DNA of 64,000 nucleotides, taken from assembly GCA_021613535.1 (NCBI GenBank), contig CP075495.1, positions 3,658,001 to 3,722,000 of the forward strand, written 5' to 3'. Source of the stretch: Adineta vaga. Its lineage: Eukaryota; Animalia; Rotifera. The number at the start of each line of letters is the position of its first letter. The first letter of the stretch is position 1. The position numbers and the translations under genes are program-made. Below, in pieces: positions 4,409 through 20,259 of this stretch. The notes under the pieces were generated by a model. That model had not been told where the DNA came from and made no database searches. It saw only the letters and a list, made by a program, of their open reading frames with translations.

Positions 4409-7400
4409 TTAGAGAGCAGTATCTTCTGTTCTTGATGGTATATTATCTTCCTGAATATCGCGAAGTAATGGATTAACAGTTGTATTATAAACACATTTAA
4501 ACAGAAAACGTGGAAGTAATGCCAGAACAACGGTGAGCAAATTGGTAAACCAGAATAAACCTTGACGAAATGTTATGTAGGATATTTGATACGAGCTCTG
4601 ACCTGCAAGGCAATTGATACACGTAACATCAAATACGAGAGTAAAACCTAGAAAAACCAAAATGCTGAATGATATAGAAGCAACTAATGGCAGATCAACA
4701 CGTCGTGTCTGTAAGAAAACATGAATCACTGAAGTAACGGTCATACTAAATGCAATCGAAAAACCGAATGATAATCCATCAATGTCAGCTTGATTTTTGT
4801 AAGCAAAATAGGCAATGAAAAATATCACCGAACTTTGCCATATAGCATCCATTATATTAGTCCAGTAGGACCACATTCCATAACATTTTGCATGTAAAGT
4901 ATACTGATATAATTCAGGTTCATGCAATGCTCGATTAGCCGGAACGTGTTGATCGAATAGAGCTGCAGCACACTAAACATTGAAAAAATCGACGATCAAA
5001 AAAAATCAGATAGTTTCTTCTTACCTGTGGAAGAACAGTAAATAAACTTGTGTAAAGTAGAACATCTATCAACGAAAATTCAATTCCCTCTCTATATCTT
5101 TCTAAATAATTACACAACTTACATAATGAGTGTAGACTTACAGCCCCAGAAAATCCATTAAATAATTGATGATAGAAAACGACGAAAACAAATGCACAAT
5201 TATGCATAAATGTATACAATATTAATTCACTCGTTCGAGTAAAACACCATGCACCATGTACAAGTAACAAACGACGAAGGCATTCAAATCGATCAACTGC
5301 AAAGTCACCTGCTGCAACTGCTTGTGATCCTTCACGACCATACACCGCCACACCACAATGAGATTCACGAATCATTCCAACATCGTTTGCACCATCACCA
5401 ATCGCCAAGATTCGATGTTTGAACACGGACTTTGCAGCACTCACTAGTTCACGCTTTTGCCTTGCTGATACTCGACAGAATAACACCGACTGACATTCAC
5501 ACACAGCTCGAATGAATTCTTTTGATTTGTATCGCAATATCACTCCTGTTCATCAACACAAACAACATCACACAACATAAACAAAACACTCGAACTCACC
5601 TAAATCATCACCAGTAACAACAACTGATACTGGTGATGATTGTGCAGCAATCACATCAGCCATTCGAGCAATCGTCTTCTCAGTTCTTACTTCATCCGAA
5701 CCACTACTCTCTTGATTGCCTATATATATATGCGAATAATATCGTTTTCATAGACAAAATCATTGATGAAAAATGAGACATACGTAGTTGTTGATCGATC
5801 TCGATGAGTTGTGAACTATAATAGATCATGTGTGTATGTTGATTGAGTCGAGCTTGAGCTGATCGGTCAAAGTCCCATATTGTGGCAGCTGGTGCATTGT
5901 TCTACAACACATATCAAGTTCAATCTTTGAACAGAGAACACAATGAGACTCACTCGAGTTGATGCTTGAGAATCAGTTAATGATGTTTGTGGAATGTTGA
6001 TGAGTGATGCAGCTTGTGCAGTACTCAACGCAGTTGCTTGTTTGTCACCTGTCAACAGCCAAACCTTGATTCCAGCACATCGCAATGTGGCAATCGCTCG
6101 TGGTACACCATCTTGCAGCTTATCTTCGACAGCTGTCAATCCAGCTAACATGAGATCAACTTCGATCTCAGTGGCTGTATCAGAAATGGCTTCTTCTCGA
6201 TTGTCCAGTGCATTTGCTGCATGTCGATATCGTTGAAACCAATCTTCGAACTCTCGTAATGACAACTGTCGATATGCAACTAGGAGAGATCGATAGCCTT
6301 GTTCAGCAAAAGTTAAACTATGTTGTTCGACGGTTTCTTTCATTCGTGAATCATTGAGAGCACTGAGATGTGGCCAAATGGATGATTCAGCACCTTTGAT
6401 GAAGAGAAAGATCTGATCATCGAGTCGTACAATGATGGACATGCGTTTTCGAGTTGAATCGAAGGGTAGTAGACAGAGGATTTCATATTCGAGATCTCGA
6501 TTGTGCGAATTGGATGGATCAAGATAACGAACGATGATCGTTTGAGCTGACCGTGAGATCATTCGCACACCGAATTGTGATGCAGTTTGACAAAGAACAA
6601 GATCATCAGCGTTGTCACCTTCATATTTTGGTTGATAGTCGAGAGAACGTCTGAGATGTGGATGATCATGAACGATGAAAGATGTATTGCAGATGGCGAG
6701 TGTTGTTAAGAATCGCTCAGTAATTGTATCAGTTTCTGCAGGTAATTCAGAACTAAAATAGAAATAAAATATGTAAGAAATGCTTTGTTTCCTAGTTTTC
6801 TTTTCAGATGGTAGATATCATTCAGAAAATCCGTATTTTTGGATACTATCTGAATTGTGAAAACTCTAATATATTATAATGAGGGATCAGTTTGGTATTG
6901 TAGTTCAAAATGACTTGCCGTTTTGAATATTGTATGCCATCAATAGACATTGTTTTGAACACCAATCGATTTTGTGTTAGTGTACCAGTTTTATCCGTAA
7001 ATACATATTCAATTTGACCAAGATCCTCATTGATTGTAAATGTTCGACAACTGATCGGATGTTCATATTTCAAATGTTTATCACGAGCTATTGTATACAT
7101 TTGTAAAACTCGAACAAGATCTAATGAAACATACAGAGCAATAGGGACCATCACTTGAAATAATATCACAAAACGTAATGTGTTGATAAAAAATCGAGCC
7201 GCTTTGTCCTGAAATGGATCATCAAGTATGAATGGAACGAATATCCATTTCTCTCCAAATGAAGTTTCCCAACGGATAGCTAGGCCCGCCCCGATTAAAC
7301 ATAATATGGTTAAGATTATACTTGAAAAGAGTACATCTCGATTGATATATCTTTCGATCAATGCATGTTTACTGATCGTTTGACGAGATGATTTGATGAT

Positions 7401-8468
7401 CTTTGTTTCATTACCTACACAAAATGAATAGTGTCACAAAAAGCATCATCATCGTCATCATCATTCTCTCGTTAGTCATTACTCACCAGCATACACAATC
7501 AATCCATCAACATACTCTGTGATTCTCAGCACACATCCACGTAACAAGAAATTACTATTATCACATGGATGAGCATTCGTTCCGGTTGAGAGCAAGATTC
7601 GACCACAGAAATGATAAATATCATCATTCGGCGGATCGCACTGCAATTCAAAACTTGTTTCTTCGGCTGCTTTGTTCACATTCAGGAAACACGACGGAAT
7701 ACTCTTTTGTTTCAGATTTGTTTCACCATCGATTGCAGCTGTATCCAGATAACATGTACCTTCAGTTGACGCCGATGAAAGAAGAAGAATATCAGCTGGT
7801 ACTGTTTGATCAGTTCGAACTCGAACAACATTGCCCACTGATAAATCTTGCCATTTGCACGGAATGAATGTTTTACTTTTTCTAGACAAATGAACAAGAG
7901 TGAGAGATAAATGAGATGAGTGAGATACTTACTTATCGTACATTTCAGCGATTTGTTTATTGATTTTTGCATCACTTCTCCATCGTTTGAGATCTTCGAC
8001 AAGATCTTTGACAGCAGTGATGGTGAGAATAACTGTCAATGGTATGAATGCAACCTTAGAATAATAAATGAAAATGTGGTTTTTTAAACAGTACATATTA
8101 ATGCTATAAATACTTGTTTTGAGAGAGCATTGACAATGGGTATCCAATTGAGTCCAATGAGAATAGCAAAGTAGATATTAGCAACACGACGAAATTGTTC
8201 GAAAAGATTTTTTGGAATGAAAGTGAGAATATTGTAACGAGTAGTTCGTATACGATTTGTTTGAGAAGTTCGTTTTCGTCGATTTTTAATTGCGATCCAG
8301 AAAGGAGATTCTGGAAGACGAGACATTATGGTGAACTATGTACGGTATAGATTTCGGTAGAGGTAATTGTGTACCATTAGTAACCGAAGAAATAGTTGAA
8401 CGACGTGGATGTGTTCGGGATATATTTACATTTCGACGGAACGTAGGTACAGCAGTACAATTACCCAT
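4409..8468 (-). CDS. P4-ATPase flippase, ATP10-like, copy B (complete, multi-exon)
   Basis: ATG at 8468 ([12 protein letters not shown]); DGETNLK, DKTGTLT phosphorylation site, [46 protein letters not shown]-terminal TM helices; stop at 4409. Confidence 0.95.
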
Positions 8469-9847: not shown

Positions 9848-10798
9848 TCACAGTCCATCACAAGGTTGTACAGTATTCGTTCGTTTCTCGCGATTAATTA
9901 ATACCAATTGACGAACTTCTTTACGATATTTTTTGCTTGTTATTGAATAGACATAAAATGTAATACTATTACTTATATAAGATATTTCAATTGAAATTTG
10001 ATTTATAAGACTATCAAAAGCAGTTGTAAGAGAATCTTTAGTTATGAAAACAGTAGATGACGTATATAATTTTTGTAATACAACTGGTATTCCAAACAAG
10101 ACAAGAATAAGCACTTGTATTAATAATATTCGTATTAATTGAATATCTCGACGTTGACCATTAGCGAGATTAGTAGAACGTTTCACATTTCTTATAGTTA
10201 AAATACTCATTATAACCATTAATATTGGTGGTATACCCGAATTCAAACAAAGTAATATAATATCATTCAATAATTTACATGTTGTACTTTGATGTATGCA
10301 TAAATTTCTTTGATTGACTGTATAACAATAGAAAACTTGTGTATATGGAAGAATGAATATAATCAAAGTAGATATTAATATAAGACGTTTAGCAATACGT
10401 AAAGAATTCCATGTACGTAGATGAACATGAATAGAAGTTGATAGATATCGATCGATACATGCCAAAAGAATAAACCATGTGGAAAGTGTAATTGATGAAT
10501 ATCGAAGATAAAATCGTATTTTACATAGACTAGGAGAATATTGTGTTGGATCAAGATTATATAAACCAAGAAAAGGTGTTAATAAACCGATATAAAGAGA
10601 AACAAAATTGATAATACTACCACTGATAAAATAAAGTGAACAAGGATTTTTTCGAAGGGATGGACGTGTAAATACCATAATATTTAATATATTACCAATA
10701 GTTCCAAGAAATAGAAATATCAATGGAATATAGCGATTTAATTCTCGTGTTACATAATTTAATTGATCAATTGTTGATTGAGTATTTGTATTACTCAT
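9848..10798 (-). CDS. Intronless class A (rhodopsin-like) orphan GPCR
   Basis: 316-aa ORF with 7 hydrophobic segments; GTIGNILNI (TM1), CKIRFY, LACIDRY (DRY), FYVYSITSKKYR (TM7/helix 8). Confidence 0.9.
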   Translation of the reverse strand: MSNTNTQSTIDQLNYVTRELNRYIPLIFLFLGTIGNILNIMVFTRPSLRKNPCSLYFISGSIINFVSLYIGLLTPFLGLYNLDPTQYSPSLCKIRFYLRYSSITLSTWFILLACIDRYLSTSIHVHLRTWNSLRIAKRLILISTLIIFILPYTQVFYCYTVNQRNLCIHQSTTCKLLNDIILLCLNSGIPPILMVIMSILTIRNVKRSTNLANGQRRDIQLIRILLIQVLILVLFGIPVVLQKLYTSSTVFITKDSLTTAFDSLINQISIEISYISNSITFYVYSITSKKYRKEVRQLVLINREKRTNTVQPCDGL

Positions 10799-11531
10799 TT
10801 TTTTGAAATAGTAGTCTTATCTAAGAAGAGTTGCGAGTATATATTCACAGTTTGATGAACTGACATAATAAGTAATCATGAACTTAGCGAGTGGGAAAAA
10901 CATCATTTCTTCATGATTAATCTGATAATCCCAGTGATATGACAGAGAAATGAGCACAGCTATAAGTTTATTTAGTTATACATAGAATTCATTAACTAAT
11001 TTGATTCTCATTAAAATTTCTTTTCTTTTGATGAAATTCAGTGAGAAAAAATTTGACATACCATTCAATACCGGAAAGACGTCTGTTAGCACAATGAGAG
11101 CGAATATGCAGGATATATCAAGATAGCCTCTGTAATAAGAACGGAGAAGCACTCTTTATTCGGTTTCCTCGTTCAAGAAGTCCATTTATTTAGAAAAAAA
11201 GAACATTGGGTCTTCCTTTTTAGATAAATTCGTCAATAAATGAAAGTATAAGTTTCTAAAATACATTGGAGTTTTTTTTTAATCTATTGCAGATGGTTCT
11301 CATAAACACATTTAAAAACTGATAAAGATTCATGATGTTTTAGAACTATATAAAATATGACAGCTTGCGCTCATGTTTAGTTCTATTTTCTATGTTTTTT
11401 AATGCAAAAAGTATAATATACTTATTAATTCTGAATCATTAAGTTGTAATACAGTGAAAAACCTGTCACTGAGCAGGTGAATGCAAAACGTTTTCAATGA
11501 GATTTCATTCTATATATTTCATTTCTTTTCC

Positions 11532-11738
11532 GTTTAGAAAAGTGTGTCAAGATGTAGAGTATGACATTGTTCTGTTTTCCAAGATGCTTCGTTTTTACGT
11601 GGAGGAAAAAAGCAACGAGTTAAAAGTCTAGAAATGAGCGTTTTTGTATATGAGTGCCTAAGTATATAATTAAGACAAGTATCATTTGAAAAAAAAACCC
11701 ACAATCACATTCCCTGCATCTTGACAAGCCGTTTAAAC
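11532..11738. mobile_element. Decayed MITE-like element with degenerate terminal inverted repeats of about 60 bp
   Basis: Left arm gtttagaaaagtgTGTCAAGATGtAGaGtATGacATTGT aligns with the reverse complement of the right arm gtttaaacggctTGTCAAGATGcAGgGaATGtgATTGT; no ORF inside; no clear TSD. Confidence 0.5.
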
Positions 11739-12246
11739 AAACAAAAAACTAAGGATATATAAAGAATCGGACAGATAGCTTTGAGGGATAAAAGATCTTG
11801 TGATAAAGTAGGAAAGTCGTGTTTTTCAACCAGTAGACTAATTAAACCATTAAATGAAAAACAAGGAACAGATTGACAGAAAAAAAGTATGAACTATTTC
11901 GAACGATATGACAAATATTAATAATTATGTTGAAATTTAGGGATAAGCTGATATAAAAGATTTTCAGAATCTATTAATGCATCATTCAAATTTAAAGTTG
12001 ACAAAATAATGACTTATGGGTCAACTTGTTCATCTTTATCTGAAACTGTCATTACGTAAAGTAATTCAAATAAGAACAGCAAAAGTGCAATCTTGTAATA
12101 TGTCACGAAGTCAATTCCATAAAGATGATTAAAAAGAGTGCTTGTGACAAACTATCTAGGATATTTCAATTTTTTATTAAAAGTTATTTATAAGATATTC
12201 AACAAGAAAAAAGAGCGATATTCTAAATAAAATAAAATCAATGAAC

Positions 12247-12902
12247 TTATGATTTCTTTTTAAACACCGGTGACATATGTTCTTGTTGTTCCATTTGATT
12301 TTCTTCATCGTTCTCTTCGTTATCATTATCATCATCATCATTTAAAAGAGCATCAAGATCTTCGATACAAGGTTCTTTTCTTTTCTTATTTTCTACTTGC
12401 AAAGATTTTGTTGGTGTTTGCATTTTTGTTGCGTAATCTTTACAAAGTTGATCATTGTCGTCGTCATCATCATCATCATTCTCGATTTGATTATTCTCAT
12501 CCATTTTAGTATCTTGCTGTTCTTGTCCTTGTTCTTGCTCAAATGATTCAGCAAAACGACGCATTTCATCATCATCAATTTCATCGAAATGTATCTGTGT
12601 TGTTGTCGGATTTAATGATCGTTGAGGAACGGTACTAAATACAAGATCATCATCAATTTCATCACCATCAAATTCCTGTTCATAATCATTGGAATTCTTT
12701 GTCTCAGTTTCTTGACCAACTGCACCTAAAATTTGAGCAACACGAGCTAATGATTGTTGTTTGACTTCAATAGGCTAGAAAGTTTTTAAAAAATCAACAT
12801 TTAAATTCATCGGACTCTAAAACACTAGAATATTTTTACTTTATGACTACCAGCAGTATGAAATGCTGTTCGCTGAGATAAACATTCATCTTGTGATGAC
12901 AT
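12247..12902 (-). CDS. Small (196 aa) acidic protein with one N-terminal BRC-like repeat (putative RAD51/DMC1-binding)
   Basis: Exon 1 12902-12840 (MSSQDECLSQRTAFHTAGSHK), 65-nt GT-AG intron, exon 2 12774-12247 (PIEVKQQSLARVAQILG... D/E-rich ...KKRKE...FKKKS). In-frame TAA just upstream of the ATG. FHTAGSHKPIEVKQQSLARVAQIL resembles BRCA2 BRC4 [23 protein letters not shown]. Confidence 0.75.
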
Positions 12903-13119
12903 TTCTTATCTGAAATAGATCAATAAATCTTTGTACATCGATGGACACTGTTTTTTTTTATATAGTATAATGATTTTTGATTTCTATGAACACATCTTTG
13001 AAATTTCTGTATATGTCGAAGAACGGTTACAGTGAAATATTGTGTAAGATAATATTCGATAGCTCGCCAGTTTTATGTTTCAATGATGAGTAGCAATTAA
13101 GTACCAGATGAACTTTTCC

Positions 13120-13189
13120 TTTGAACAGTTTCAATTCGCGCATAAACGAAGTTCTACGGGGTACAAAGTGAAATCAATAATCTGATTGG
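13120..13189. promoter_or_regulatory. Candidate CHR (TTTGAA), E2F-like (TTCGCGC) and CCAAT elements in the bidirectional BRC-gene/RPL35A promoter
   Basis: TTTGAA 13120-13125, TTCGCGC 13135-13141, ATTGG 13185-13189; short motifs that could occur by chance. Confidence 0.3.
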
Positions 13190-13485
13190 TTCGTTGATTA
13201 ACCTATGGAACTTGAAGAATAAAGATTTGATTGTAAAAATAATATGAAAATATTCTTAAATATTCATTTAATGTCGTATAAAAATGATTTAACTAATTTT
13301 TAGATCGTATTTTTATTTCTAAAAACTCCATGAGTAATGGTTTGTGTTTGACCAATCCGATTCGTTGTTTATTTTATTTATTTTATTTTCTTAAATGAAG
13401 AAAGAAAATCAGTCTGTTCTTCATTTTGAATTTCATCTCAAGCAATTATTTCATCTTAATTTCAGATTTGATTGCCGATCAAACA

Positions 13486-14042
13486 ATGACATCGTCAAAG
13501 AAAGTTGAAAAACCACAGGGTTCATATATCAAAAAGGGCCGGTAGGTTCGATTTCGACTAGAATTTCATTCACAACAATTTTCTCTATGATTTTAGTCTC
13601 TATGTCAAAGCAGTATTTACTGGTTTTCGACGTGGTAAACGTAATCAACATGAAAATACTGCTTTACTTAAATTAGATGGTGTGAATAATCGACGTGAAA
13701 CAAACTTTTATTTAGGTAAACGTTGTGCCTATGTATACAAGGCTAAAAAGTATGTTTGAAATCTTCAATGTCTTTTCAATAGAAGTTACGAATATCTTTT
13801 GAAATTATTCTAGCAAGACTTTAGTACCTGGTCAAAAACGTTTAAATCGTGTTCGTATTATGTGGGGAAAAGTGACCCGAGCACATGGTAAAAGTGGTGC
13901 TGTACGAGCTAAATTCCGTCGTAATTTACCACCCAAAGCTATCGGACGACGAATTCGTGTTGTATGTTTATTAATACTGATTTTTAAGTAATCAAATATT
14001 ATTCTTTTCTTCTTCTAGATGCTTTATCCTTCACGAATTTAA
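13486..14042 (+). CDS. RPL35A: 60S ribosomal protein L35a (eL33), 4 exons
   Basis: [31 protein letters not shown]...[14 protein letters not shown]...[42 protein letters not shown]; absent from the ORF track. Confidence 0.97.
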
Positions 14043-14285
14043 ACAACAAAACTATTATCGTTCGGAATGGTTCACATTCATCGACTCAACAAATCTATTC
14101 TTGTTTTCATCATCTTTATTCAAAACTTGTTTTGAGTCGAAAAGAATAAATAAGATAATATAAAGATAAACAACTATCATTGTTTCAATTCAAATAGAGC
14201 ATTACTGAATTCATTCGTTTGAGTAGTTTATCTGACAAGATTTATTGACACACAAAAAAAATAGTAAATCAATCAAGTTATCTAT

Positions 14286-16115
14286 TTAATAATTTTCTGT
14301 AAATTTTCGATGACAAATCGATACGCCATGTTCATCATATTCACGTTTTGTTACACAATAATTTGCATAATCTGAAGAATTGGTTAGAGTAACACCAGCA
14401 TTTAATGCATACGTAATTGGGCTAAAGGAATAGAGTAGAATGTGAATATAAATAAGAATAGATCGTTTACTCTTCTGGTAAAGTTATTCGAATAGGATAA
14501 TCATCTTTAATCATTGAGCGTAATTCGTTTTCTCTATAAGAAGAATCTTTGTGAGAAAAGTAAATTTGAAAATTATATATAATAAACTTACAAACGTTGC
14601 TTGAAATTTGGAAATAAACAATTTCCACCGATTAATAAGATATTATTATATAAACTCGGTCGAATATCTAAATCAAATTCGATATTTTGTTCGAAAAATC
14701 TATGTATCGTTCTTAATCATACGTTCAGGTAATTCTTCAACAGAATTATAAATCGATTCTGCAATTCCTGCTTGATCGATACCAATCAATGATGGTCGAA
14801 AAAGTATCTCCGGAATAGTAAAACGTTCAACACTCATTCGTATGACCTAATTTCAAAGAAATTCTATGCGAATCTATACAAAAATTGTTTTCTTTCCTAC
14901 TTGCTGCTGTTGTTGTTGCTGTTGTTTAGTAGAATTCTTTTTCGTAGTATCTATATTGTTACTAATCGAAACTGATGATGACGATGGAGGTTGAATATAA
15001 CCTTGTTTGATTTCATTATAATCTGGTAAGACATAATCCAGTGCATGTGGATTTTGAGATAATGGTAAACTAAAAGAACATTTCATATAACATATTTCAT
15101 TTGAAAGTAAATAACAATCTTACCGTGCTTTCTTCATATCATCTTGAAAATCTAATGAAATAAAGCAAACATTTTCTTTCAATTCATTGATAATATATGT
15201 TTCATTCATTACTAACAATTGTCTAAACATTCAAATAGATAAAATAGTGTTCTTTTATTTTTCAATTAATTACCGATAAGTAATAACATTTTTCAATTGA
15301 TTTGTTAATAATTTTCCGCCAACATCAATTCTTTCGAAGAAAAAGAAATATCGAATTATTCATTAATCAATTCGTCATACCTAGTCATTCCATCAAGAAT
15401 TTTTCTTCCTTGATAAAATGGAACGATATGTGTGAAAGAAAAGCCAGAATCGACAACTAATACATAATTCGATTTTGTATCACATTCGTATTGATACGCA
15501 CTTAAAGTAGCCGCTAAAAGAACAAAAACAATTCCTAAGATTAAGTTCTCGTGAAATTCTATCTTACGATCATATCGTGCAAATGATGCTACTTCATATT
15601 CTTCGAAAAAAATTTGATCCATCGTTTCTCGAATAAAGTTCAAATTCATATATGGTTCTGTCATTAATAGTCCTGTCGATTTGAATGACATCTAGATCAT
15701 ATGAGAATATTTCAATGAACAAAAATAAGAAGATTGAAATTATGAATTACTTTTCCAAATAGATAATCCCAGACTTGTTTTTCAATATTCCAATCGACTA
15801 AATAACCCTAGAGGAAAGAAAACTAATGTTAATTATTTCATTCTTTATTGGAATTATTCCATTCACTTTTTGAAATGGTAATTGATAATAAAGACTTGTT
15901 TTATTCGGACATTCATTATCAATTTGATCAGCAATAAATGTACGACGAGGATAAAATTTTGATTTCATTATACAATTAGGAAGAATTCTAGATTGAAATT
16001 GATACTCATCAACACAGAGGATATATTATTCAAACCTGATATTTTCATTTGTATTCATTCTAGATTTCGATGTTGAAGCTCCATTATCAATAACAAATAT
16101 TGGCTTTGTTGCCAT
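14286..16115 (-). CDS. ACTR6: Actin-related protein 6 (SWR1/SRCAP complex)
   Basis: MATKPIFVIDNGA, ILPNCIMKSK, GYLVDW, LLMTEPYMN, VVDSGFSFTHIVP, DVGGKLLTNQLK, VMNETYIINELKENVCFIS, DYVLPDY, ERFTIPEILFRPS, KREYDEHG. Confidence 0.92.
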
Positions 16116-16303: not shown

Positions 16304-17209
16304 TTAATCGTGCGGATATTGTTCTTGAAGCCATTGTTGCATGATATATTGAACACCATCAAAAAGAGTGAAATAATCAGTCAATTGAGCATTGACAATC
16401 TAAATCGAAGAAAATATTTTCTTTCAGTAACAGAAACAATGATCAAGATTTTCTATACATACTTTTGAATCTTTAATCACTTCAATATGTTCTTGAGGGA
16501 TGTACGTTTTATGAGCACGTCGATCTCTTGTATCAAGTAAAACGGAGTAATTGGGCTGTCTTCGATATTCCTAAGAATAAGTTCGAAATAAAAGATTTCG
16601 TGTTTGAAAGAAAAAAACGAACTGGATGTCCTTGATGATGTTCATCAAGCCATTCATCAGGTGCAGAAGCGATTTCATCCCATCCGATAATAACTGCACG
16701 ATAATTATAGATTTTATGTCGAACAACTTGCCCAACTCGATATTTGATATGGTCAGATCGAGGTGATCGAATATTTGGTGAAGCTATACAAAGAGACGAA
16801 GTTTTACATGGAATCAAATTCATTAGGAAACATACTTCCATAATAACCATATTTCTCTCTCATATAATAAACTTCTGTTGCTGGAGATTCAATTCCACGT
16901 CGCCATGTTCGTTTGTGTAAAAGTGGATTAAATCCGAGTGGAATTTCAATTACGAAACTAATCAACCAGTTAAACCATGTATTTGGAGATAAATAATGAA
17001 AAATTTGATTTATTTGATTTGTTAATCTAAAACAAAAAAAATTAACGATGTTGTATATCAAGTTATTCTTCTTCATGAGAAAGAAAGCAATACTTATTAA
17101 CCGCATGAGCTTGTTCAATATCTTTTGAAGACCATTTTGTCAAAATAAAATATTGTATAGGTACAGCAAGTAAAAGTAAAGCAAATTGAAGAAGCGCTAG
17201 ACGATCCAT
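16304..17209 (-). CDS. YccV/HspQ-like ('hemimethylated DNA-binding') domain protein with an N-terminal hydrophobic anchor
   Basis: MDRLALLQFALLLLAVPIQYFIL N-terminus; KYRVGQVVRHKIYNYRAVIIGWD, TYIPQEHI, YFTLFDGVQY, WLQEQYPHD*. Confidence 0.8.
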
Positions 17210-18620
17210 TTACATCTGAAATTAAAGTTAAATATAATTTCAATGTACAAAATTCATGGCAATCATCTCCTCTGTTAGTTTAGTCAGTTAGAGTAACTCA
17301 TATAGATTACATCGAATATATGAGAATTCTTGGGTAGGAAATTAGTTTTATTCTGAATGAAACGAATGATGAAGCTACACAGTACACAAATAGTTGATTG
17401 TAAATAAAAAGTTAGAGCAGATACTTCTGTAGAATATGGATGAATCTAAAAATCTTCATAGAGTGAAAACTCGTGAAGAATTTTCGCTTTCTATTCGTCT
17501 ATAATGATAATACTCGTAAATAAATTAGGAAGTATTCCTTATCTTGGCTGTCTTTTTATTCAAAATTATCGAACTTACTTCTAAGAAATTCTGTGTCTAT
17601 TTGAATTCGCAAATATTTACATTACTTCATAGTTTTGTATGAAGAATAAGATTTAAAGTAACTATTGGATCATAGATGATTAAAATGTAAATTCTTCATA
17701 AAAAGTAATCTTATTCAACTGATGATCTAAATAAAAACGTCATTTTCTCAAAGATAATTTGAATAAAAAATCTTTTCTTGTCTTACCTATTAACTGTTAT
17801 TATAATGAACTCATTAGACTACAATCCGTATCTTTGATTTGCAAACGTTAGAATACAACTTTCTATTTTCTGACTTGTATCATTAGAGGAATGGTCAAGT
17901 CTTCCGTTAAATAAATTATTTACATGAATTGTTTATTTGAAAGTCAACGATAAACAAACAAAAATAAAGGAGTAAAATAACAGACAATTTTACCTATTAT
18001 TTTCTACGATAGTTTTTCTTTCTTGTAAATGAAAATGATTTTCTTTATTTATAGATCATCAATAAACAAATGCAAACAGATGTATTCTGTTCTGTCAGTG
18101 TACCAATAGTTTATATGCTCGTGTTAAATATGGTAGTGACATCTATGATTTTGGAATATTAATTTTGTTGAATATGCGAGTTTCTAAAATTTGAATAAGT
18201 GAAACTCATTTGTTTGCATTGCTTGAAACAGATGAACTTTAGAATTGATACAGAAGGGTCTTTAATAAATTAATCTCTCTAAGGAACTTCTGAATTCTAT
18301 TACTGAAATAGTTTTCGATTTAGATTGCTCATTGCGGTTATTATTAACATTCTTCTTGGGATTGTATTCATAATATTGAATGATGTTAATTTTCAACTGT
18401 TTAAGAGAGATTCTTGTATTTGACTTAGATTATTGATGAATGAATTATCTTGTTGGAATTGAAAATAATATACTAGGAGAATCCTATATTTTCATTGATG
18501 TAACCTGTTACATATTTTAATTTTAGAAGTCAAATAACAAATTATATTTTATTTAAAAAAAAACAATATGAACACATAATAAGATTTTTAGACTAAAATA
18601 TATTTCGTAAATGAAAATCT

Positions 18621-18881
18621 CTAGTAATGATGATGGCCATGGTGATGATGGTGCTGGTGATATGGTGGGGGCGGGGGTGGACAATAATCGATGTGAGGTG
18701 GTGCGGGACAGTATTGAGGTATTGGTGGTGGTGGAGGGCAGTAACCAGGCATTGGCGGTGGCGGACAATAGCCGGGAACTGGTGGTGGTGGCGGACAATA
18801 ACCGGGAACTGGTGGTGGTGGACAATAGTTATGATGGTGATGAGGAGGACGATGATGATGATATGAATGTTCTTGACCCAT
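18621..18881 (-). CDS. 86-aa His/Pro/Cys/Tyr-rich orphan with (G/N/Q/D)YCP(P/A)PP repeats
   Basis: Single-exon ORF, GC-rich island in AT-rich DNA, tatata-type sequence upstream; six YCP units between His-rich termini. Confidence 0.7.
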   Translation of the reverse strand: MGQEHSYHHHRPPHHHHNYCPPPPVPGYCPPPPPVPGYCPPPPMPGYCPPPPPIPQYCPAPPHIDYCPPPPPPYHQHHHHHGHHHY

Positions 18882-19422
18882 GTTTATTTGTATGAGAAAG
18901 TGAGTTTAATAAATGAAAAGACGATAGTTAGATTGAAAAAAAAGACAACAAATGATGAATATATATATTTCGATATCTATGACAAGTTTATTCTATGATA
19001 AAAATAAACGACATGACTTAATAGTCATTTGCACATGACGTATCATCTGCGTCAAAGTGAAAGATAAAGAAAGAAAGATCTGCAGTTTTAATATAAAAAA
19101 ACAAAAACATTTCAGCGAGCAGATAAGAATAGTATTAATCATGCATCATAATGTTAGTGAATACTAATATTGAAGATGATTGTTATAAAGACATGTAGAA
19201 CATTCTTGAATATAAGTTTACTAATTTAATAATAATCCTGTACTGTATCAAAAGATATTTATTATGTCAGCCTATCGATTTTCTATATTTCTGAGATATA
19301 ACAGAGTAAAGGTAGGCTTTGATGTTTATTTCTTGTATACATAAATATGGTGCAGAAAAATTACAGATTGATTTAGTACAAATATAGTTTTAAAGTAAAA
19401 GAAAATAATTTGTTTTTATTTT

Positions 19423-19743
19423 TCAATATCCATGAGGATAATGTTGATGATGCGATGGTGGTGGTGGTGGTGGACAGTAACCTGAGGGTGGTGCATGTGA
19501 ATAACTGCCTTCATATTGATAATTACCTGGTCCATAATTTGGTAGAGGTGGTGGTGGAGTATATCCGCCAGGTTGATGATAAGATGTAGGTGGTGGTGGA
19601 GTATATCCACCAGGTTGAGCGTAAGGTGAAGGTGGTGGTGGACAGAAACCACTACCTACTGAGCCAGGAGGTGGAGGACAATATCCACCAGGTGTTGAAT
19701 ATGACGGAGGTCCGTATGGATTGGGATATTGATTGTAACTCAT
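19423..19743 (-). CDS. About 106-aa Pro/Gly/Tyr-rich orphan (GGY(C/T)PPPP repeats), related to the neighbour
   Basis: First ATG at 19743 (MSYNQYPNPYGPP...); repeated GYCPPPP/GYTPPPP; His-rich C-terminus. Confidence 0.7.
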   Translation of the reverse strand: MSYNQYPNPYGPPSYSTPGGYCPPPPGSVGSGFCPPPPSPYAQPGGYTPPPPTSYHQPGGYTPPPPLPNYGPGNYQYEGSYSHAPPSGYCPPPPPPSHHQHYPHGY

Positions 19744-20259
19744 GGTTGCTTTTGTGCTACTTAATAAACTCAATATCCAACAGAATGTTACCAAAGAATA
19801 AGTGAGATGGTGAAGATATTAACGACGTAATGTATATATAGACGAAGATTTAGAGAGAAAAATATTGTCGAGATAAGCGATCACCTTAGTAACAGCATTT
19901 TTTTTATCATAGAAAGAAACAAATAAAGAACATGTTAATCACATGGTTGTGTGCTGTAATTTCCAGCAATCTTATGTAACAATATACGGAAAGGCACCTA
20001 ATATGATCAATATTAATTCTGATTGTCGTATTTTATGATGATACAAAAGTTTCTTTCTCATTCAGTATTTTCATCGAATATTTGAAATAACTTTTCCAAC
20101 TATTTCATCATATATCTGTCGTTACTTTTTAATCTCGTATTAGCAGAAATATGAAGTAAAAAAACAGAACAGATCGAATATGATTAACTAACAAAATAAC
20201 ATATGTTAATTAAGTTCTATTACAAATATATTTCAAGATCATCCAGTAGTTTTCAAATC

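What the first reader, a model, noticed from the sequence alone, without database searches (positions are those of the whole stretch)
12247..12902. Stand-alone single-BRC-repeat acidic mini-protein: candidate new RAD51/DMC1 regulator
Seen: splicing a 65-nt intron gives a complete 196-aa protein (in-frame stop before the ATG) beginning ...AFHTAGSHK|PIEVKQQSLARVAQILG. The rest is D/E-rich low-complexity sequence with spaced Phe/Leu (FDGDEIDDDLVF, FDEIDDDEM, IEDLDALL) and basic NLS-like motifs (KKRKE, KKKS). Known: BRCA2 BRC4 ([23 protein letters not shown]) binds RAD51 through FxxA plus a downstream helix, and isolated BRC peptides modulate or disrupt RAD51 filaments. BRCA2 orthologs normally add OB-fold DNA-binding domains, which are absent here. 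Inference: this is either a split or minimal BRCA2 module or a BRC-mimic RAD51 chaperone/inhibitor, with an acidic DSS1-like or DNA-mimic tail. That would matter in an animal (probably a bdelloid) known for repairing massive double-strand breakage. The motif straddles an intron, so ORF-level annotation misses it.
Basis: partly seen in the sequence, partly recalled or inferred. Interest (0 to 1): 0.85.

Follow-up and report, generated by a model that had tools for sequence, protein, structure and literature searches.

The report
Tiny BRCA2-like RAD51-binding protein of bdelloids
A small, expressed gene found only in bdelloid rotifers encodes a 196-residue acidic, disordered protein whose first 40 residues look and dock like a BRCA2 "BRC" motif on RAD51; this matters because these radiation-proof animals were reported to have no BRCA2.

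Summary
On the minus strand, a 63-nt exon (12902-12840), a 65-nt GT..AG intron and a 528-nt exon (12774-12247) encode 196 aa. NCBI lists the identical protein as a hypothetical Adineta vaga protein. Transcript-like contigs from three studies carry exactly this splice, run about 12956-12141, and join no neighbouring gene.

The gene is single-copy and syntenic between Adineta and Rotaria (Arp, RPL35A, this gene, 7TM). Orthologues occur across bdelloids, including deep-branching Didymodactylos (33% identity). That orthologue keeps F-x-T-A...SLAR-A..LL, there on one exon.

Constraint is mosaic: dN/dS is 0.11 in the BRC part, about 0 in four other short blocks and about 1 in the linkers.

A profile of the N-terminus hits one PDB chain, a Leishmania BRCA2 BRC peptide (E 0.023). 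Pfam PF00634 is not reached (12.1 bits at best; cut-off 20.3).

A co-fold with bdelloid RAD51 scores 0.86 against 0.00 for the controls. The Phe sits in the FxxA pocket and Ile-Leu in the second pocket.

No BRCA2 DNA-binding domain was found in the genome, and DSS1 is a separate gene.

Most likely it is a minimal BRCA2-type RAD51 regulator without a DNA-binding domain. Whether it loads RAD51 or restrains it is untested.

The parts
12903..12956 (-). 5' untranslated region (at least 54 nt), with an in-frame TAA two codons before the ATG
   Evidence: Contig X13 record 6 runs collinear with the genome to 12956. The stop is seen.
12840..12902 (-). Exon 1 coding part, 21 aa. It carries the first half of the BRC-like motif (T12-A-F14-H-T16-A17-G-S-H-K21).
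12775..12839 (-). 65-nt phase-0 intron (GT..AG) that splits the BRC-like motif. It is at the same position in Rotaria (60 nt) and absent from this position in Didymodactylos.
   Evidence: The joint 12774->12840 is present in contigs of 3 runs from 3 studies.
12247..12774 (-). Exon 2 coding part, 175 aa plus TAA stop (12247-12249)
12724..12869 (-). BRC-like RAD51-binding motif, residues 12-38 (the span includes the intron). It has an FxTA hairpin, a helix SLARVAQ and the hydrophobic pair I36-L37.
   Evidence: Conservation. PDB profile hit to a BRCA2 BRC peptide. Co-fold contacts at residues 12-19, 21, 23, 25-26, 28-30, 32-33, 36-38. dN/dS 0.11.
12616..12672 (-). Conserved acidic-hydrophobic block 2, residues 56-74 (FDGDE.DDDLVFSTVPQRS)
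   Evidence: Invariant columns. dN/dS about 0.08.
12529..12594 (-). Conserved acidic helix block 3, residues 82-103 (IHFDEIDDDEMRRFAESFEQEQ)
   Evidence: dN = 0 against Rotaria. AF2 predicts a helix at 89-108.
12403..12447 (-). Block 4, residues 131-145, with the invariant T-P-x-K-S (a CDK-type consensus by sequence only)
   Evidence: The kinase site is inference.
12373..12387 (-). Basic patch KKRKE, residues 151-155, a candidate nuclear localisation signal
   Evidence: K154 is invariant. The function is inferred.
12331..12369 (-). Block 5, residues 157-169, an acidic amphipathic motif (C-I-E-D-L-D-A-L-L-N-D-D-D)
   Evidence: D160, D162, A163, L164 and L165 are invariant. It is also kept in Didymodactylos as LEYLDSLLNDDD.
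12250..12276 (-). C-terminal motif M-S-P-V-F-K-K-K, residues 188-195
   Evidence: Residues S189-K195 are invariant across the 18 aligned Adineta/Rotaria-type sequences (M188 varies M/V/T in a few). Didymodactylos has MSPVFLNKKN.
12141..12246 (-). 3' untranslated region. AATAAA lies at 12178-12173, about 30 nt before the contig ends.
   Evidence: Contig ends at 12141-12145 in three runs. Sequence.

Best explanation
This is a real, expressed, bdelloid-wide gene for a 196-aa, strongly acidic (pI about 4.1) and largely disordered nuclear protein. Its N-terminal 40 residues are a single BRC-type motif.

Proposed mechanism. The motif binds a RAD51 monomer on the ATPase domain. Phe14 and Ala17 of the FxTA hairpin fill the pocket that normally takes the FxxA oligomerisation motif of the next RAD51 protomer. 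The following helix (SLARVAQ) places Ile36-Leu37 in the second (LFDE-type) pocket. The rest of the protein is a string of short conserved docking motifs separated by freely evolving linkers. These are two or three acidic-hydrophobic blocks, a TPxK site, a KKRK patch and a C-terminal MSPVFKKK.

My reading. It is a minimal BRCA2-type RAD51 chaperone or mediator without a DNA-binding domain. It holds RAD51 in a monomeric, import-competent form and delivers it to a partner bound by the acidic blocks. My best guess for that partner is RPA on resected DNA.

Shown here: gene structure, expression, conservation, selection pattern, and absence of a canonical BRCA2 DNA-binding domain in the genome.

Predicted only: RAD51 binding.

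Inferred: nuclear import, regulation by phosphorylation, the RPA link, a positive rather than negative effect on recombination, and descent from BRCA2.
For: - Gene and transcript.
- Orthologues in Adineta, Rotaria, many environmental bdelloid contigs and Didymodactylos. Synteny is conserved.
- F, T, A and SLAR-A are the only columns invariant down to Didymodactylos (33% overall identity).
- dN/dS is 0.11 in the BRC part and about 1 in the linkers.
- The profile of residues 5-42 against 177,635 PDB sequences gives one hit, the Leishmania BRCA2 BRC1 peptide 7qv8_D (E 0.023). It is also the top hit with Didymodactylos added (E 0.62) and appears with the single sequence (E 1.2).
- PF00634 is the only Pfam family hit by the Didymodactylos N-terminus.
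- Co-fold of P0001:1-50 with the bdelloid RAD51 ATPase domain: ipSAE 0.86, 0.85, 0.86; best of 3 controls 0.00. The runs share at least 91% of contacts and partner pLDDT is at least 69. The tool's mark was reached by 51 of 78 solved complexes and 2 of 108 mismatched pairs.
- The RAD51 contact residues align with human M158/Y159, 186-192, 202-210, M251, R254, L255 and E258. These include Tyr205 and Met251, which PMC9162458 names as the LFDE pocket.
- Thr at -2 and the Thr of FxTA match the hairpin-stabilising residues described for LiBRC1 (PMC9162458).
- Precedents: moss PpBRCA2 is 391 aa, fully disordered, has an NLS and BRC repeats, lacks a DNA-binding domain, is functional, and was earlier thought absent (PMC12412785). 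A single BRC fused to RPA70 is active in BRCA2-mutant cells (PMC3240595).
Against: - Pfam's BRCA2-repeat model does not score the Adineta or Rotaria motif at all. It scores the Didymodactylos motif only at 12.1 bits, against a cut-off of 20.3.
- The F-to-SL spacing is one residue longer than in human BRC4 and LiBRC1.
- The sequence statistics are modest (E 0.023 at best).
- The co-fold can score high from memory of solved BRC-RAD51 complexes. It therefore shows likeness, not binding. It also used Rotaria RAD51 (237 of 243 residues identical to the A. vaga exons, one conservative Thr/Ser change in the interface) and no alignment.
- With net charge about -35 the protein cannot plausibly bind ssDNA as BRCA2 and moss BRCA2 do, so a mediator role needs an adaptor that I have not shown.
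- A free single BRC peptide can also inhibit RAD51 filaments (PMC1557805 abstract).
- No homologue was found outside bdelloids, so descent from BRCA2 is unproven.
Confidence: 0.6

Rival explanations
1. Same binding, opposite sign. The protein is a RAD51 buffer or anti-recombinase. As a free single BRC it caps RAD51 monomers, blocks filament growth, and, helped by its DNA-like negative charge, keeps RAD51 off chromatin until it is released, for example by phosphorylation at TPxK or SP.
For: It rests on the same BRC evidence. Isolated BRC peptides prevent RAD51 filament assembly in vitro (PMC1557805 abstract, listed). There is no DNA-binding module and the net charge is -35. Bdelloid somatic repair is reported to lean on end joining (PMC6264785; 10.64898/2026.04.30.722046 abstract).
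Against: Four further blocks are conserved as strongly as the BRC. That suggests partner docking rather than simple capping. A single BRC tethered to RPA is positive in cells (PMC3240595). DBD-less BRCA2 in moss promotes recombination (PMC12412785).
Confidence: 0.2
2. The BRC likeness is convergent or incidental. The protein is an acidic nuclear hub or chaperone (for histones, RPA or another basic partner), and its conserved N-terminus binds something other than RAD51.
For: The Pfam threshold is not met. The motif spacing is off by one residue. Most of the protein is made of acidic-hydrophobic motifs of a generic type (PMC10479964 describes RPA70N ligands this way). The language-model and structure atlases find nothing.
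Against: The positions that survive to Didymodactylos are exactly the defining BRC positions: F, T, A, S-L-x-R-A and the dihydrophobic pair. The only PDB hit is a BRC peptide. The co-fold scores 0.86 against 0.00 and contacts the two known pockets.
Confidence: 0.12
3. The two exons are part of a larger gene, such as a conventional BRCA2 or a fusion with a neighbour, or are a decaying remnant.
For: None was found beyond the general difficulty of short-intron gene models.
Against: Contigs of 690-748 nt from three studies start after an in-frame stop and end about 30 nt after an AATAAA. No contigs lay on either flank, though that is weak evidence by itself. The neighbours are RPL35A, on the opposite strand, and a 7TM receptor. 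Purifying selection argues against decay. No BRCA2 domains were found anywhere in the genome.
Confidence: 0.02

Closest known systems
BRC repeats of BRCA2 (human BRC4 with RAD51; Leishmania infantum BRC1 with LiRAD51, PDB 7QV8, PMC9162458)
   Same: It has an F-x-T-A hairpin with Thr at position 3 and Thr at -2, alternating Ile/Val, then a helix S-L-x-[KR]-[AV]-A and a hydrophobic pair. The same RAD51 pockets are used in the co-fold. This is the only PDB sequence hit.
   Different: One extra residue lies between Phe and the helix. It has G-A/T instead of D-E after the hydrophobic pair (Didymodactylos has LLEE). It scores below Pfam's cut-off. There is a single copy at the very N-terminus of a 196-aa protein.
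Non-canonical BRCA2 without a DNA-binding domain: moss PpBRCA2 (391 aa, PMC12412785) and Drosophila Brca2 (named as the other exception in that paper)
   Same: It is short, intrinsically disordered, and has an NLS plus BRC motif(s) with no helical or OB domains. It occurs in a lineage where BRCA2 had been reported missing.
   Different: It has one BRC instead of four (moss). It is half the size. It is extremely acidic, so the ssDNA binding shown for the moss N-terminus is unlikely. No sequence similarity outside the BRC was tested or found.
Synthetic BRC-RPA70 fusions that rescue BRCA2-mutant cells (Saeki et al. 2006, as described in PMC3240595)
   Same: A single BRC plus a way to reach RPA-coated ssDNA is enough for recombination. 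The bdelloid protein has one BRC plus acidic-hydrophobic blocks of the general type that bind RPA70N (PMC10479964).
   Different: The RPA link here is only my inference from composition. It was not tested.
Single-BRC BRCA2 orthologues with a DNA-binding domain (Ustilago Brh2, C. elegans BRC-2; from my own knowledge, not checked here)
   Same: A single BRC is sufficient in vivo.
   Different: Those proteins keep OB folds and DSS1 dependence. This one has neither.
DSS1/SEM1 (PF05160)
   Same: It is small and acidic with scattered aromatic residues.
   Different: There is no PF05160 match. The genome has a separate DSS1 gene at G000:C6:9792241-9792414 scoring 56.4 bits.

Membership tests
BRC repeat (Pfam PF00634) | FxxA tetrad with conserved Phe and Ala | tested here: met
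   F14 and A17 are invariant in all orthologues, including Didymodactylos (F13, A16).
BRC repeat (Pfam PF00634) | Thr at position 3 of the tetrad, a Ser/Gly turn with Lys, and alternating Ile/Val of the hairpin | tested here: met
   Adineta/Rotaria have F-H-T-A-G-S-H-K-P-I-E-V. Didymodactylos has F-I-T-A-S-N-K-E-I-P-V. The roles of Thr115 and Thr111 are described in PMC9162458. Adineta/Rotaria have one residue more in the turn.
BRC repeat (Pfam PF00634) | Second module: helix ending in a dihydrophobic pair (the LFDE type) | tested here: met
   The sequences are SLARVAQ-IL/IM-G (Adineta, Rotaria) and SLARAAR-LL-EE (Didymodactylos). I36-L37 contact the RAD51 residues equivalent to Y205, M251, R254, L255 and E258 in the co-fold. 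The acidic pair is present only in Didymodactylos.
BRC repeat (Pfam PF00634) | Score above Pfam's gathering cut-off (20.3 bits) | tested here: not met
   There is no hit for the exons, the full-length proteins or the N-terminal 45 aa of five Adineta/Rotaria species. Didymodactylos residues 1-45 score 12.1 bits, E 0.14, and PF00634 is the only family listed.
BRC repeat (Pfam PF00634) | Docks on the RAD51 ATPase domain in the BRC4 mode | tested here: met
   This is a prediction only: ipSAE 0.86 against a best control of 0.00, contacts as above. The tool warns that a pass may reflect memory of solved BRC-RAD51 complexes.
BRC repeat (Pfam PF00634) | Physical, Phe-dependent binding to RAD51 | not testable with these tools
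   It needs pull-down or ITC with wild-type and Phe14/Ala17 variants.
Canonical BRCA2 | Helical domain plus OB folds (the DNA- and DSS1-binding domain) | tested here: not met
   The protein has no such Pfam domain. The AF2 model is disordered, mean pLDDT 56.5. PF09103 and PF09169 give no match in the genome. PF09104 gives one spurious 14.3-bit hit antisense to another ORF.
Canonical BRCA2 | Descent from the ancestral rotifer BRCA2 (orthology with monogonont BRCA2) | not testable with these tools
The length window of the searches (108-343 aa) excludes full-size BRCA2.
DBD-less non-canonical BRCA2 (moss, Drosophila type) | Disordered protein with an NLS and BRC motif(s) and no DNA-binding domain | tested here: met
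   The KKRKE patch is conserved. The NLS is judged by sequence only.
DBD-less non-canonical BRCA2 (moss, Drosophila type) | Several tandem BRC repeats | tested here: not met
   There is only one F-x-T-A...SL motif in the 196 aa.
DBD-less non-canonical BRCA2 (moss, Drosophila type) | ssDNA binding by the disordered region | not tested
   It is unlikely on charge grounds: 54 Asp+Glu against 19 Lys+Arg, net charge about -35.
DSS1/SEM1 (PF05160) | Match to the DSS1_SEM1 model | tested here: not met
   No hit at E up to 10. The genome's DSS1 is elsewhere.

The most novel reading that the evidence does not exclude
This 196-aa protein is the working replacement for BRCA2 in bdelloid rotifers, a clade reported to lack BRCA2 and RAD52. 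It would be a single BRC motif coupled, through conserved acidic-hydrophobic motifs, to RPA on resected DNA. That makes it a natural counterpart of the synthetic BRC-RPA fusions and the smallest recombination mediator known in an animal. It would have arisen in the bdelloid stem by loss of the whole DNA-binding domain.
Probability: 0.3. Interest if true: 0.9.

Novelty: new variant of a known kind. Interest (0 to 1): 0.72.

Why it matters
Bdelloid rotifers rebuild genomes shattered by desiccation and radiation, and they show gene conversion. Yet the published repair-gene inventory lists BRCA2, RAD52 and NBS1 as absent from A. vaga (PMC6264785). A second survey found only weak BRCA2 matches (10.1101/226720). 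How RAD51 gets loaded in these animals is therefore an open question.

A conserved, expressed, single-copy protein with a BRC-type motif gives that question a concrete, testable candidate. It would also extend the recently recognised class of BRCA2 proteins without a DNA-binding domain (moss, Drosophila) to its smallest and most acidic form. That tests how little of BRCA2 is needed. If the protein instead restrains RAD51, it would bear on why somatic repair in bdelloids relies on end joining.

Tried and rejected
- Pfam on each exon and on six full-length orthologues gave only sub-threshold noise (GET2, DUFs) and no BRCA2 or DSS1.
- Pfam on the N-terminal 45 aa of five species gave nothing.
- PDB search with the whole-family profile gave as best hit a 'EDLDALLDD' stretch in the linker of bacterial MecA (E 0.016). 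I read this as a chance acidic match.
- ESM Atlas by features gave no usable hit. By structure it gave only TM below 0.5 to unrelated folds.
- The search for a paralogue or ohnologue in the genome found a DNA hit of only 47 bases, at query positions that fall in the Asp/Glu-rich coding tract; I did not inspect the hit locus. The protein hit was E 0.7. The gene is therefore single-copy although RAD51 has two copies.
- The genome-wide PF00634 scan found one 16.2-bit hit at C3:16569562. It lies in a 25-aa open frame, out of frame with the local ORF, so I rejected it.
- The PF09104 hit at C6:11739445 is antisense to an unrelated ORF, so I rejected it.
- The profile search of 5.8 billion proteins (length window 108-343 aa) found no member outside bdelloids.
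Searches were made exon by exon by reference, or with the public protein P0001 that a search returned and that equals the spliced model.

Full report
**1. What is in the sequence**

- On the minus strand an ATG at 12902 opens a 63-nt exon that ends ...TAFHTAGSHK. It is followed by GTAAAA...TTCTAG (12839-12775, 65 nt).
- A 528-nt exon then starts PIEVKQQSLARVAQILG and ends in TAA at 12249-12247.
- An in-frame TAA lies two codons before the ATG.
- The window is G000:C2:3658001-3722000 of a 100.8-Mb, six-contig genome.
- A protein search with exon 2 returned a public 196-aa record, 'hypothetical protein I4U23_006916 [Adineta vaga]' (P0001). It equals exon 1 plus exon 2.
Every search used the exons by reference or this public record.

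**2. Is it expressed and stand-alone?**

- Assembled contigs of four public runs were laid on 10500-15500.
- In three runs from three studies (X1, X5, X13) the contigs lack introns throughout, also in the neighbouring genes, and some end in poly(A). They are therefore transcript assemblies.
- All three carry the joint 12774->12840, which skips 65 nt (CT..AC on the + strand, so GT..AG on the gene strand).
- The longest contig (748 nt) covers 12141-12774 and 12840-12956. An AATAAA lies at 12178-12173.
- No contigs lay on 11669-12002 or 13005-13338. The tool warns that a hole proves nothing, so this only agrees with a separate transcript. No contig joins these exons to another gene.
- Differences between runs are confined to the UTR and the acidic tracts (3-nt and 12-nt indels at 12328 and 12518). 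None lies in the BRC-coding part.

**3. Family and conservation**

- Exon 2 finds 47 proteins, all bdelloid or from environmental contigs: Adineta steineri, A. ricciae, Rotaria sordida, R. socialis, and Rotaria sp. Silwood1 and Silwood2.
- Several environmental predictions read through the intron in frame at the same place.
- A profile search added a distant member from Didymodactylos carnosus, E 0.028. Its full-length cluster mate P0319 is 200 aa and 33% identical.
- Nothing outside bdelloids appeared within the searchable length window.
- Gene order is conserved. It runs actin-related gene, RPL35A on the other strand, this gene, then a 7TM receptor, in A. vaga and in Rotaria. RPL35A is also nearby in Didymodactylos.
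- The gene has no second copy in the haploid assembly, although RAD51 has two, on C2 and C5.

**4. The shape of the constraint**

- Alignment shows six near-invariant blocks separated by variable linkers.
- The blocks are residues 6-38, 56-74, 82-103, the TPxKS site at 141-145, 154-167 and 188-195.
- Between A. vaga and Rotaria, dN/dS is 0.11 for residues 5-38 and 0 to 0.08 for the other blocks. It is 0.8 to 1.2 in the linkers. dS is about 0.4 to 0.5.
- AF2 with the family alignment gives mean pLDDT 56.5 and three short helices at 27-38, 89-108 and 127-138.
- The protein has pI about 4.1 and net charge about -35.
- This is the pattern of a disordered protein made of short docking motifs, not of plain low complexity.

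**5. Is the N-terminus a BRC motif?**

Against:
- Pfam PF00634 gives no hit for Adineta or Rotaria, on exons, full length or the first 45 aa.
- The genome scan is blind to it because the intron splits it.

For:
- (a) In Didymodactylos the motif lies on one exon and reads P-T-F-I-T-A-S-N-K-E-I-P-V-P-K-S-T-S-L-A-R-A-A-R-L-L-E-E. PF00634 is the only Pfam family it hits, but at 12.1 bits, below the 20.3 cut-off.
- (b) The columns invariant between this sequence and the Adineta/Rotaria ones are Q, F, T, A, S-L-A-R and A. These are the defining BRC positions, although overall identity is 29-33%.
- (c) A profile of residues 5-42 searched against all 177,635 distinct PDB sequences returns a single hit, the 35-aa BRC1 peptide of Leishmania BRCA2 in complex with RAD51 (7qv8_D, E 0.023). 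With one sequence E is 1.2. With Didymodactylos added E is 0.62.
- (d) The structure paper for that peptide describes the Thr of F-x-T-A and a Thr at -2 as the residues that hold the hairpin (PMC9162458). Adineta/Rotaria have both (T12, T16).

The spacing from Phe to S-L is one residue longer than in BRC4 and LiBRC1.

**6. Co-fold with RAD51**

- The A. vaga RAD51 gene is split into six short exons.
- I aligned those exons to a full-length nematode RAD51 and searched with that alignment. This returned Rotaria sp. Silwood1 RAD51 (P0199).
- P0199 is identical to the A. vaga exons at 237 of 243 positions of the ATPase domain. One conservative Thr/Ser change lies in the interface.
- P0199:121-368, which excludes RAD51's own FxxA linker, was folded with P0001:1-50. 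The scores were ipSAE 0.86, 0.85 and 0.86, and the best of three controls was 0.00.
- The runs share at least 91% of contacts and partner pLDDT is at least 69. The tool's mark was reached by 51 of 78 solved complexes and 2 of 108 mismatched pairs.
- Partner contacts are residues 12-19, 21, 23, 25-26, 28-30, 32-33 and 36-38.
- By alignment to human RAD51, the RAD51 contacts are M158/Y159, 186-192, 202-210, M251, R254, L255 and E258.
- PMC9162458 names Tyr205 and Met251 as the walls of the LFDE pocket, and bdelloid RAD51 keeps both.
- The tool states that a pass for a family with solved complexes shows likeness, not binding. I take it that way.

**7. Is there any other BRCA2?**

- Six-frame scans of the genome with BRCA2 OB1 and helical models found nothing.
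- OB3 gave one 14.3-bit hit antisense to an unrelated ORF.
- The BRC model gave one 16.2-bit hit in a 25-aa frame.
- The same tool does find RAD51 and DSS1 exon by exon. It therefore works on this genome, though a very divergent domain cut by introns could escape.
- The literature agrees. BRCA2, RAD52 and NBS1 are listed as absent from A. vaga while monogononts keep BRCA2 (PMC6264785). A second study found BRCA2 only at weak thresholds (10.1101/226720).

**8. Interpretation**

- The best-supported reading is a minimal, DBD-less, BRCA2-type RAD51 binder.
- The closest natural precedent is moss PpBRCA2. It is 391 aa, wholly disordered, has an NLS and four BRC repeats, is essential for RAD51 foci and repair, and was also long thought absent (PMC12412785).
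- The closest functional precedent is the synthetic BRC-RPA70 fusion, in which a single BRC is substantially active (PMC3240595).
- The bdelloid protein differs from both in having one BRC and an extreme negative charge. That charge makes ssDNA binding implausible.
- Its three acidic-hydrophobic blocks fit the loose description of RPA70N ligands: about 20 residues, mixed acidic and hydrophobic, with little mutual homology (PMC10479964). That description is unspecific and I could not test it.
- Whether the protein promotes or restrains RAD51 is open. Isolated BRC peptides can do either, depending on context.
- The tail is not DSS1. There is no PF05160 match, and a separate DSS1 gene scores 56.4 bits.

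**9. Verdict**

BRC-type motif, stand-alone gene and RAD51 docking are supported. DSS1 likeness is not. Pfam membership fails. Binding and function are untested.
- It is a new variant of a known kind.
- Its interest comes from the organism: it gives a concrete candidate for RAD51 control in animals reported to lack BRCA2.

Noticed in passing
window 13486-14173 (+): This is a ribosomal protein L35a (eL33) gene with three short GT..AG introns (13541-13595, 13750-13813, 13962-14018). Contig depths are in the thousands and poly(A) tails appear at 14153-14173. It sits head-to-head about 580 nt from the mini-gene's ATG. Rotaria has the same arrangement.
   Followed up: partly
window 12328 and 12518: The runs differ by in-frame indels (3 nt and 12 nt) inside the Asp/Glu-rich tracts of the gene. 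The conserved blocks show no differences. These look like alleles or strain variants in the unconstrained linkers.
   Followed up: no
L017:6001-6698 (Didymodactylos carnosus) against window 12775-12839: The intron that splits the BRC motif in Adineta and Rotaria is absent in Didymodactylos, which instead has a 95-nt intron after ...DDELSR. So there was an intron gain or loss within bdelloids at this gene.
   Followed up: partly
G000:C2:12063890-12064888 and G000:C5:7625915-7626847: RAD51 is kept as two copies on C2 and C5, each split into six or more short exons. The BRC mini-gene on C2 has no counterpart on C5. No DMC1-strength third locus appeared among the scored candidates.
   Followed up: partly
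window 14232-15500+ (-): This is an actin-related protein gene with at least seven introns of 49-58 nt, all confirmed by transcript contigs. It is syntenic with an Actin-family gene in Rotaria.
   Followed up: partly
window 9848-10798 (-): This is an intron-less 316-aa seven-transmembrane receptor-like ORF just downstream of the mini-gene. Almost no contigs lay on it in the runs examined. Rotaria has a 7tm_1 gene in the same place.
   Followed up: no
window 4935-8326 (-): These are several exons of a P-type ATPase that looks like a phospholipid flippase. I judged this from motifs in the ORF translations only.
   Followed up: no
window 18553-19794 (-): These are Pro/His/Tyr-rich repetitive ORFs (GYCPPPP-type repeats) that coincide with a GC-skew spike of 0.32 at 18-20 kb. 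Their function is unknown.
   Followed up: no
window 16533-16850 (-): This ORF has a stretch that reminds me of the YccV/hemimethylated-DNA-binding-like domain. That is from memory and was not checked.
   Followed up: no
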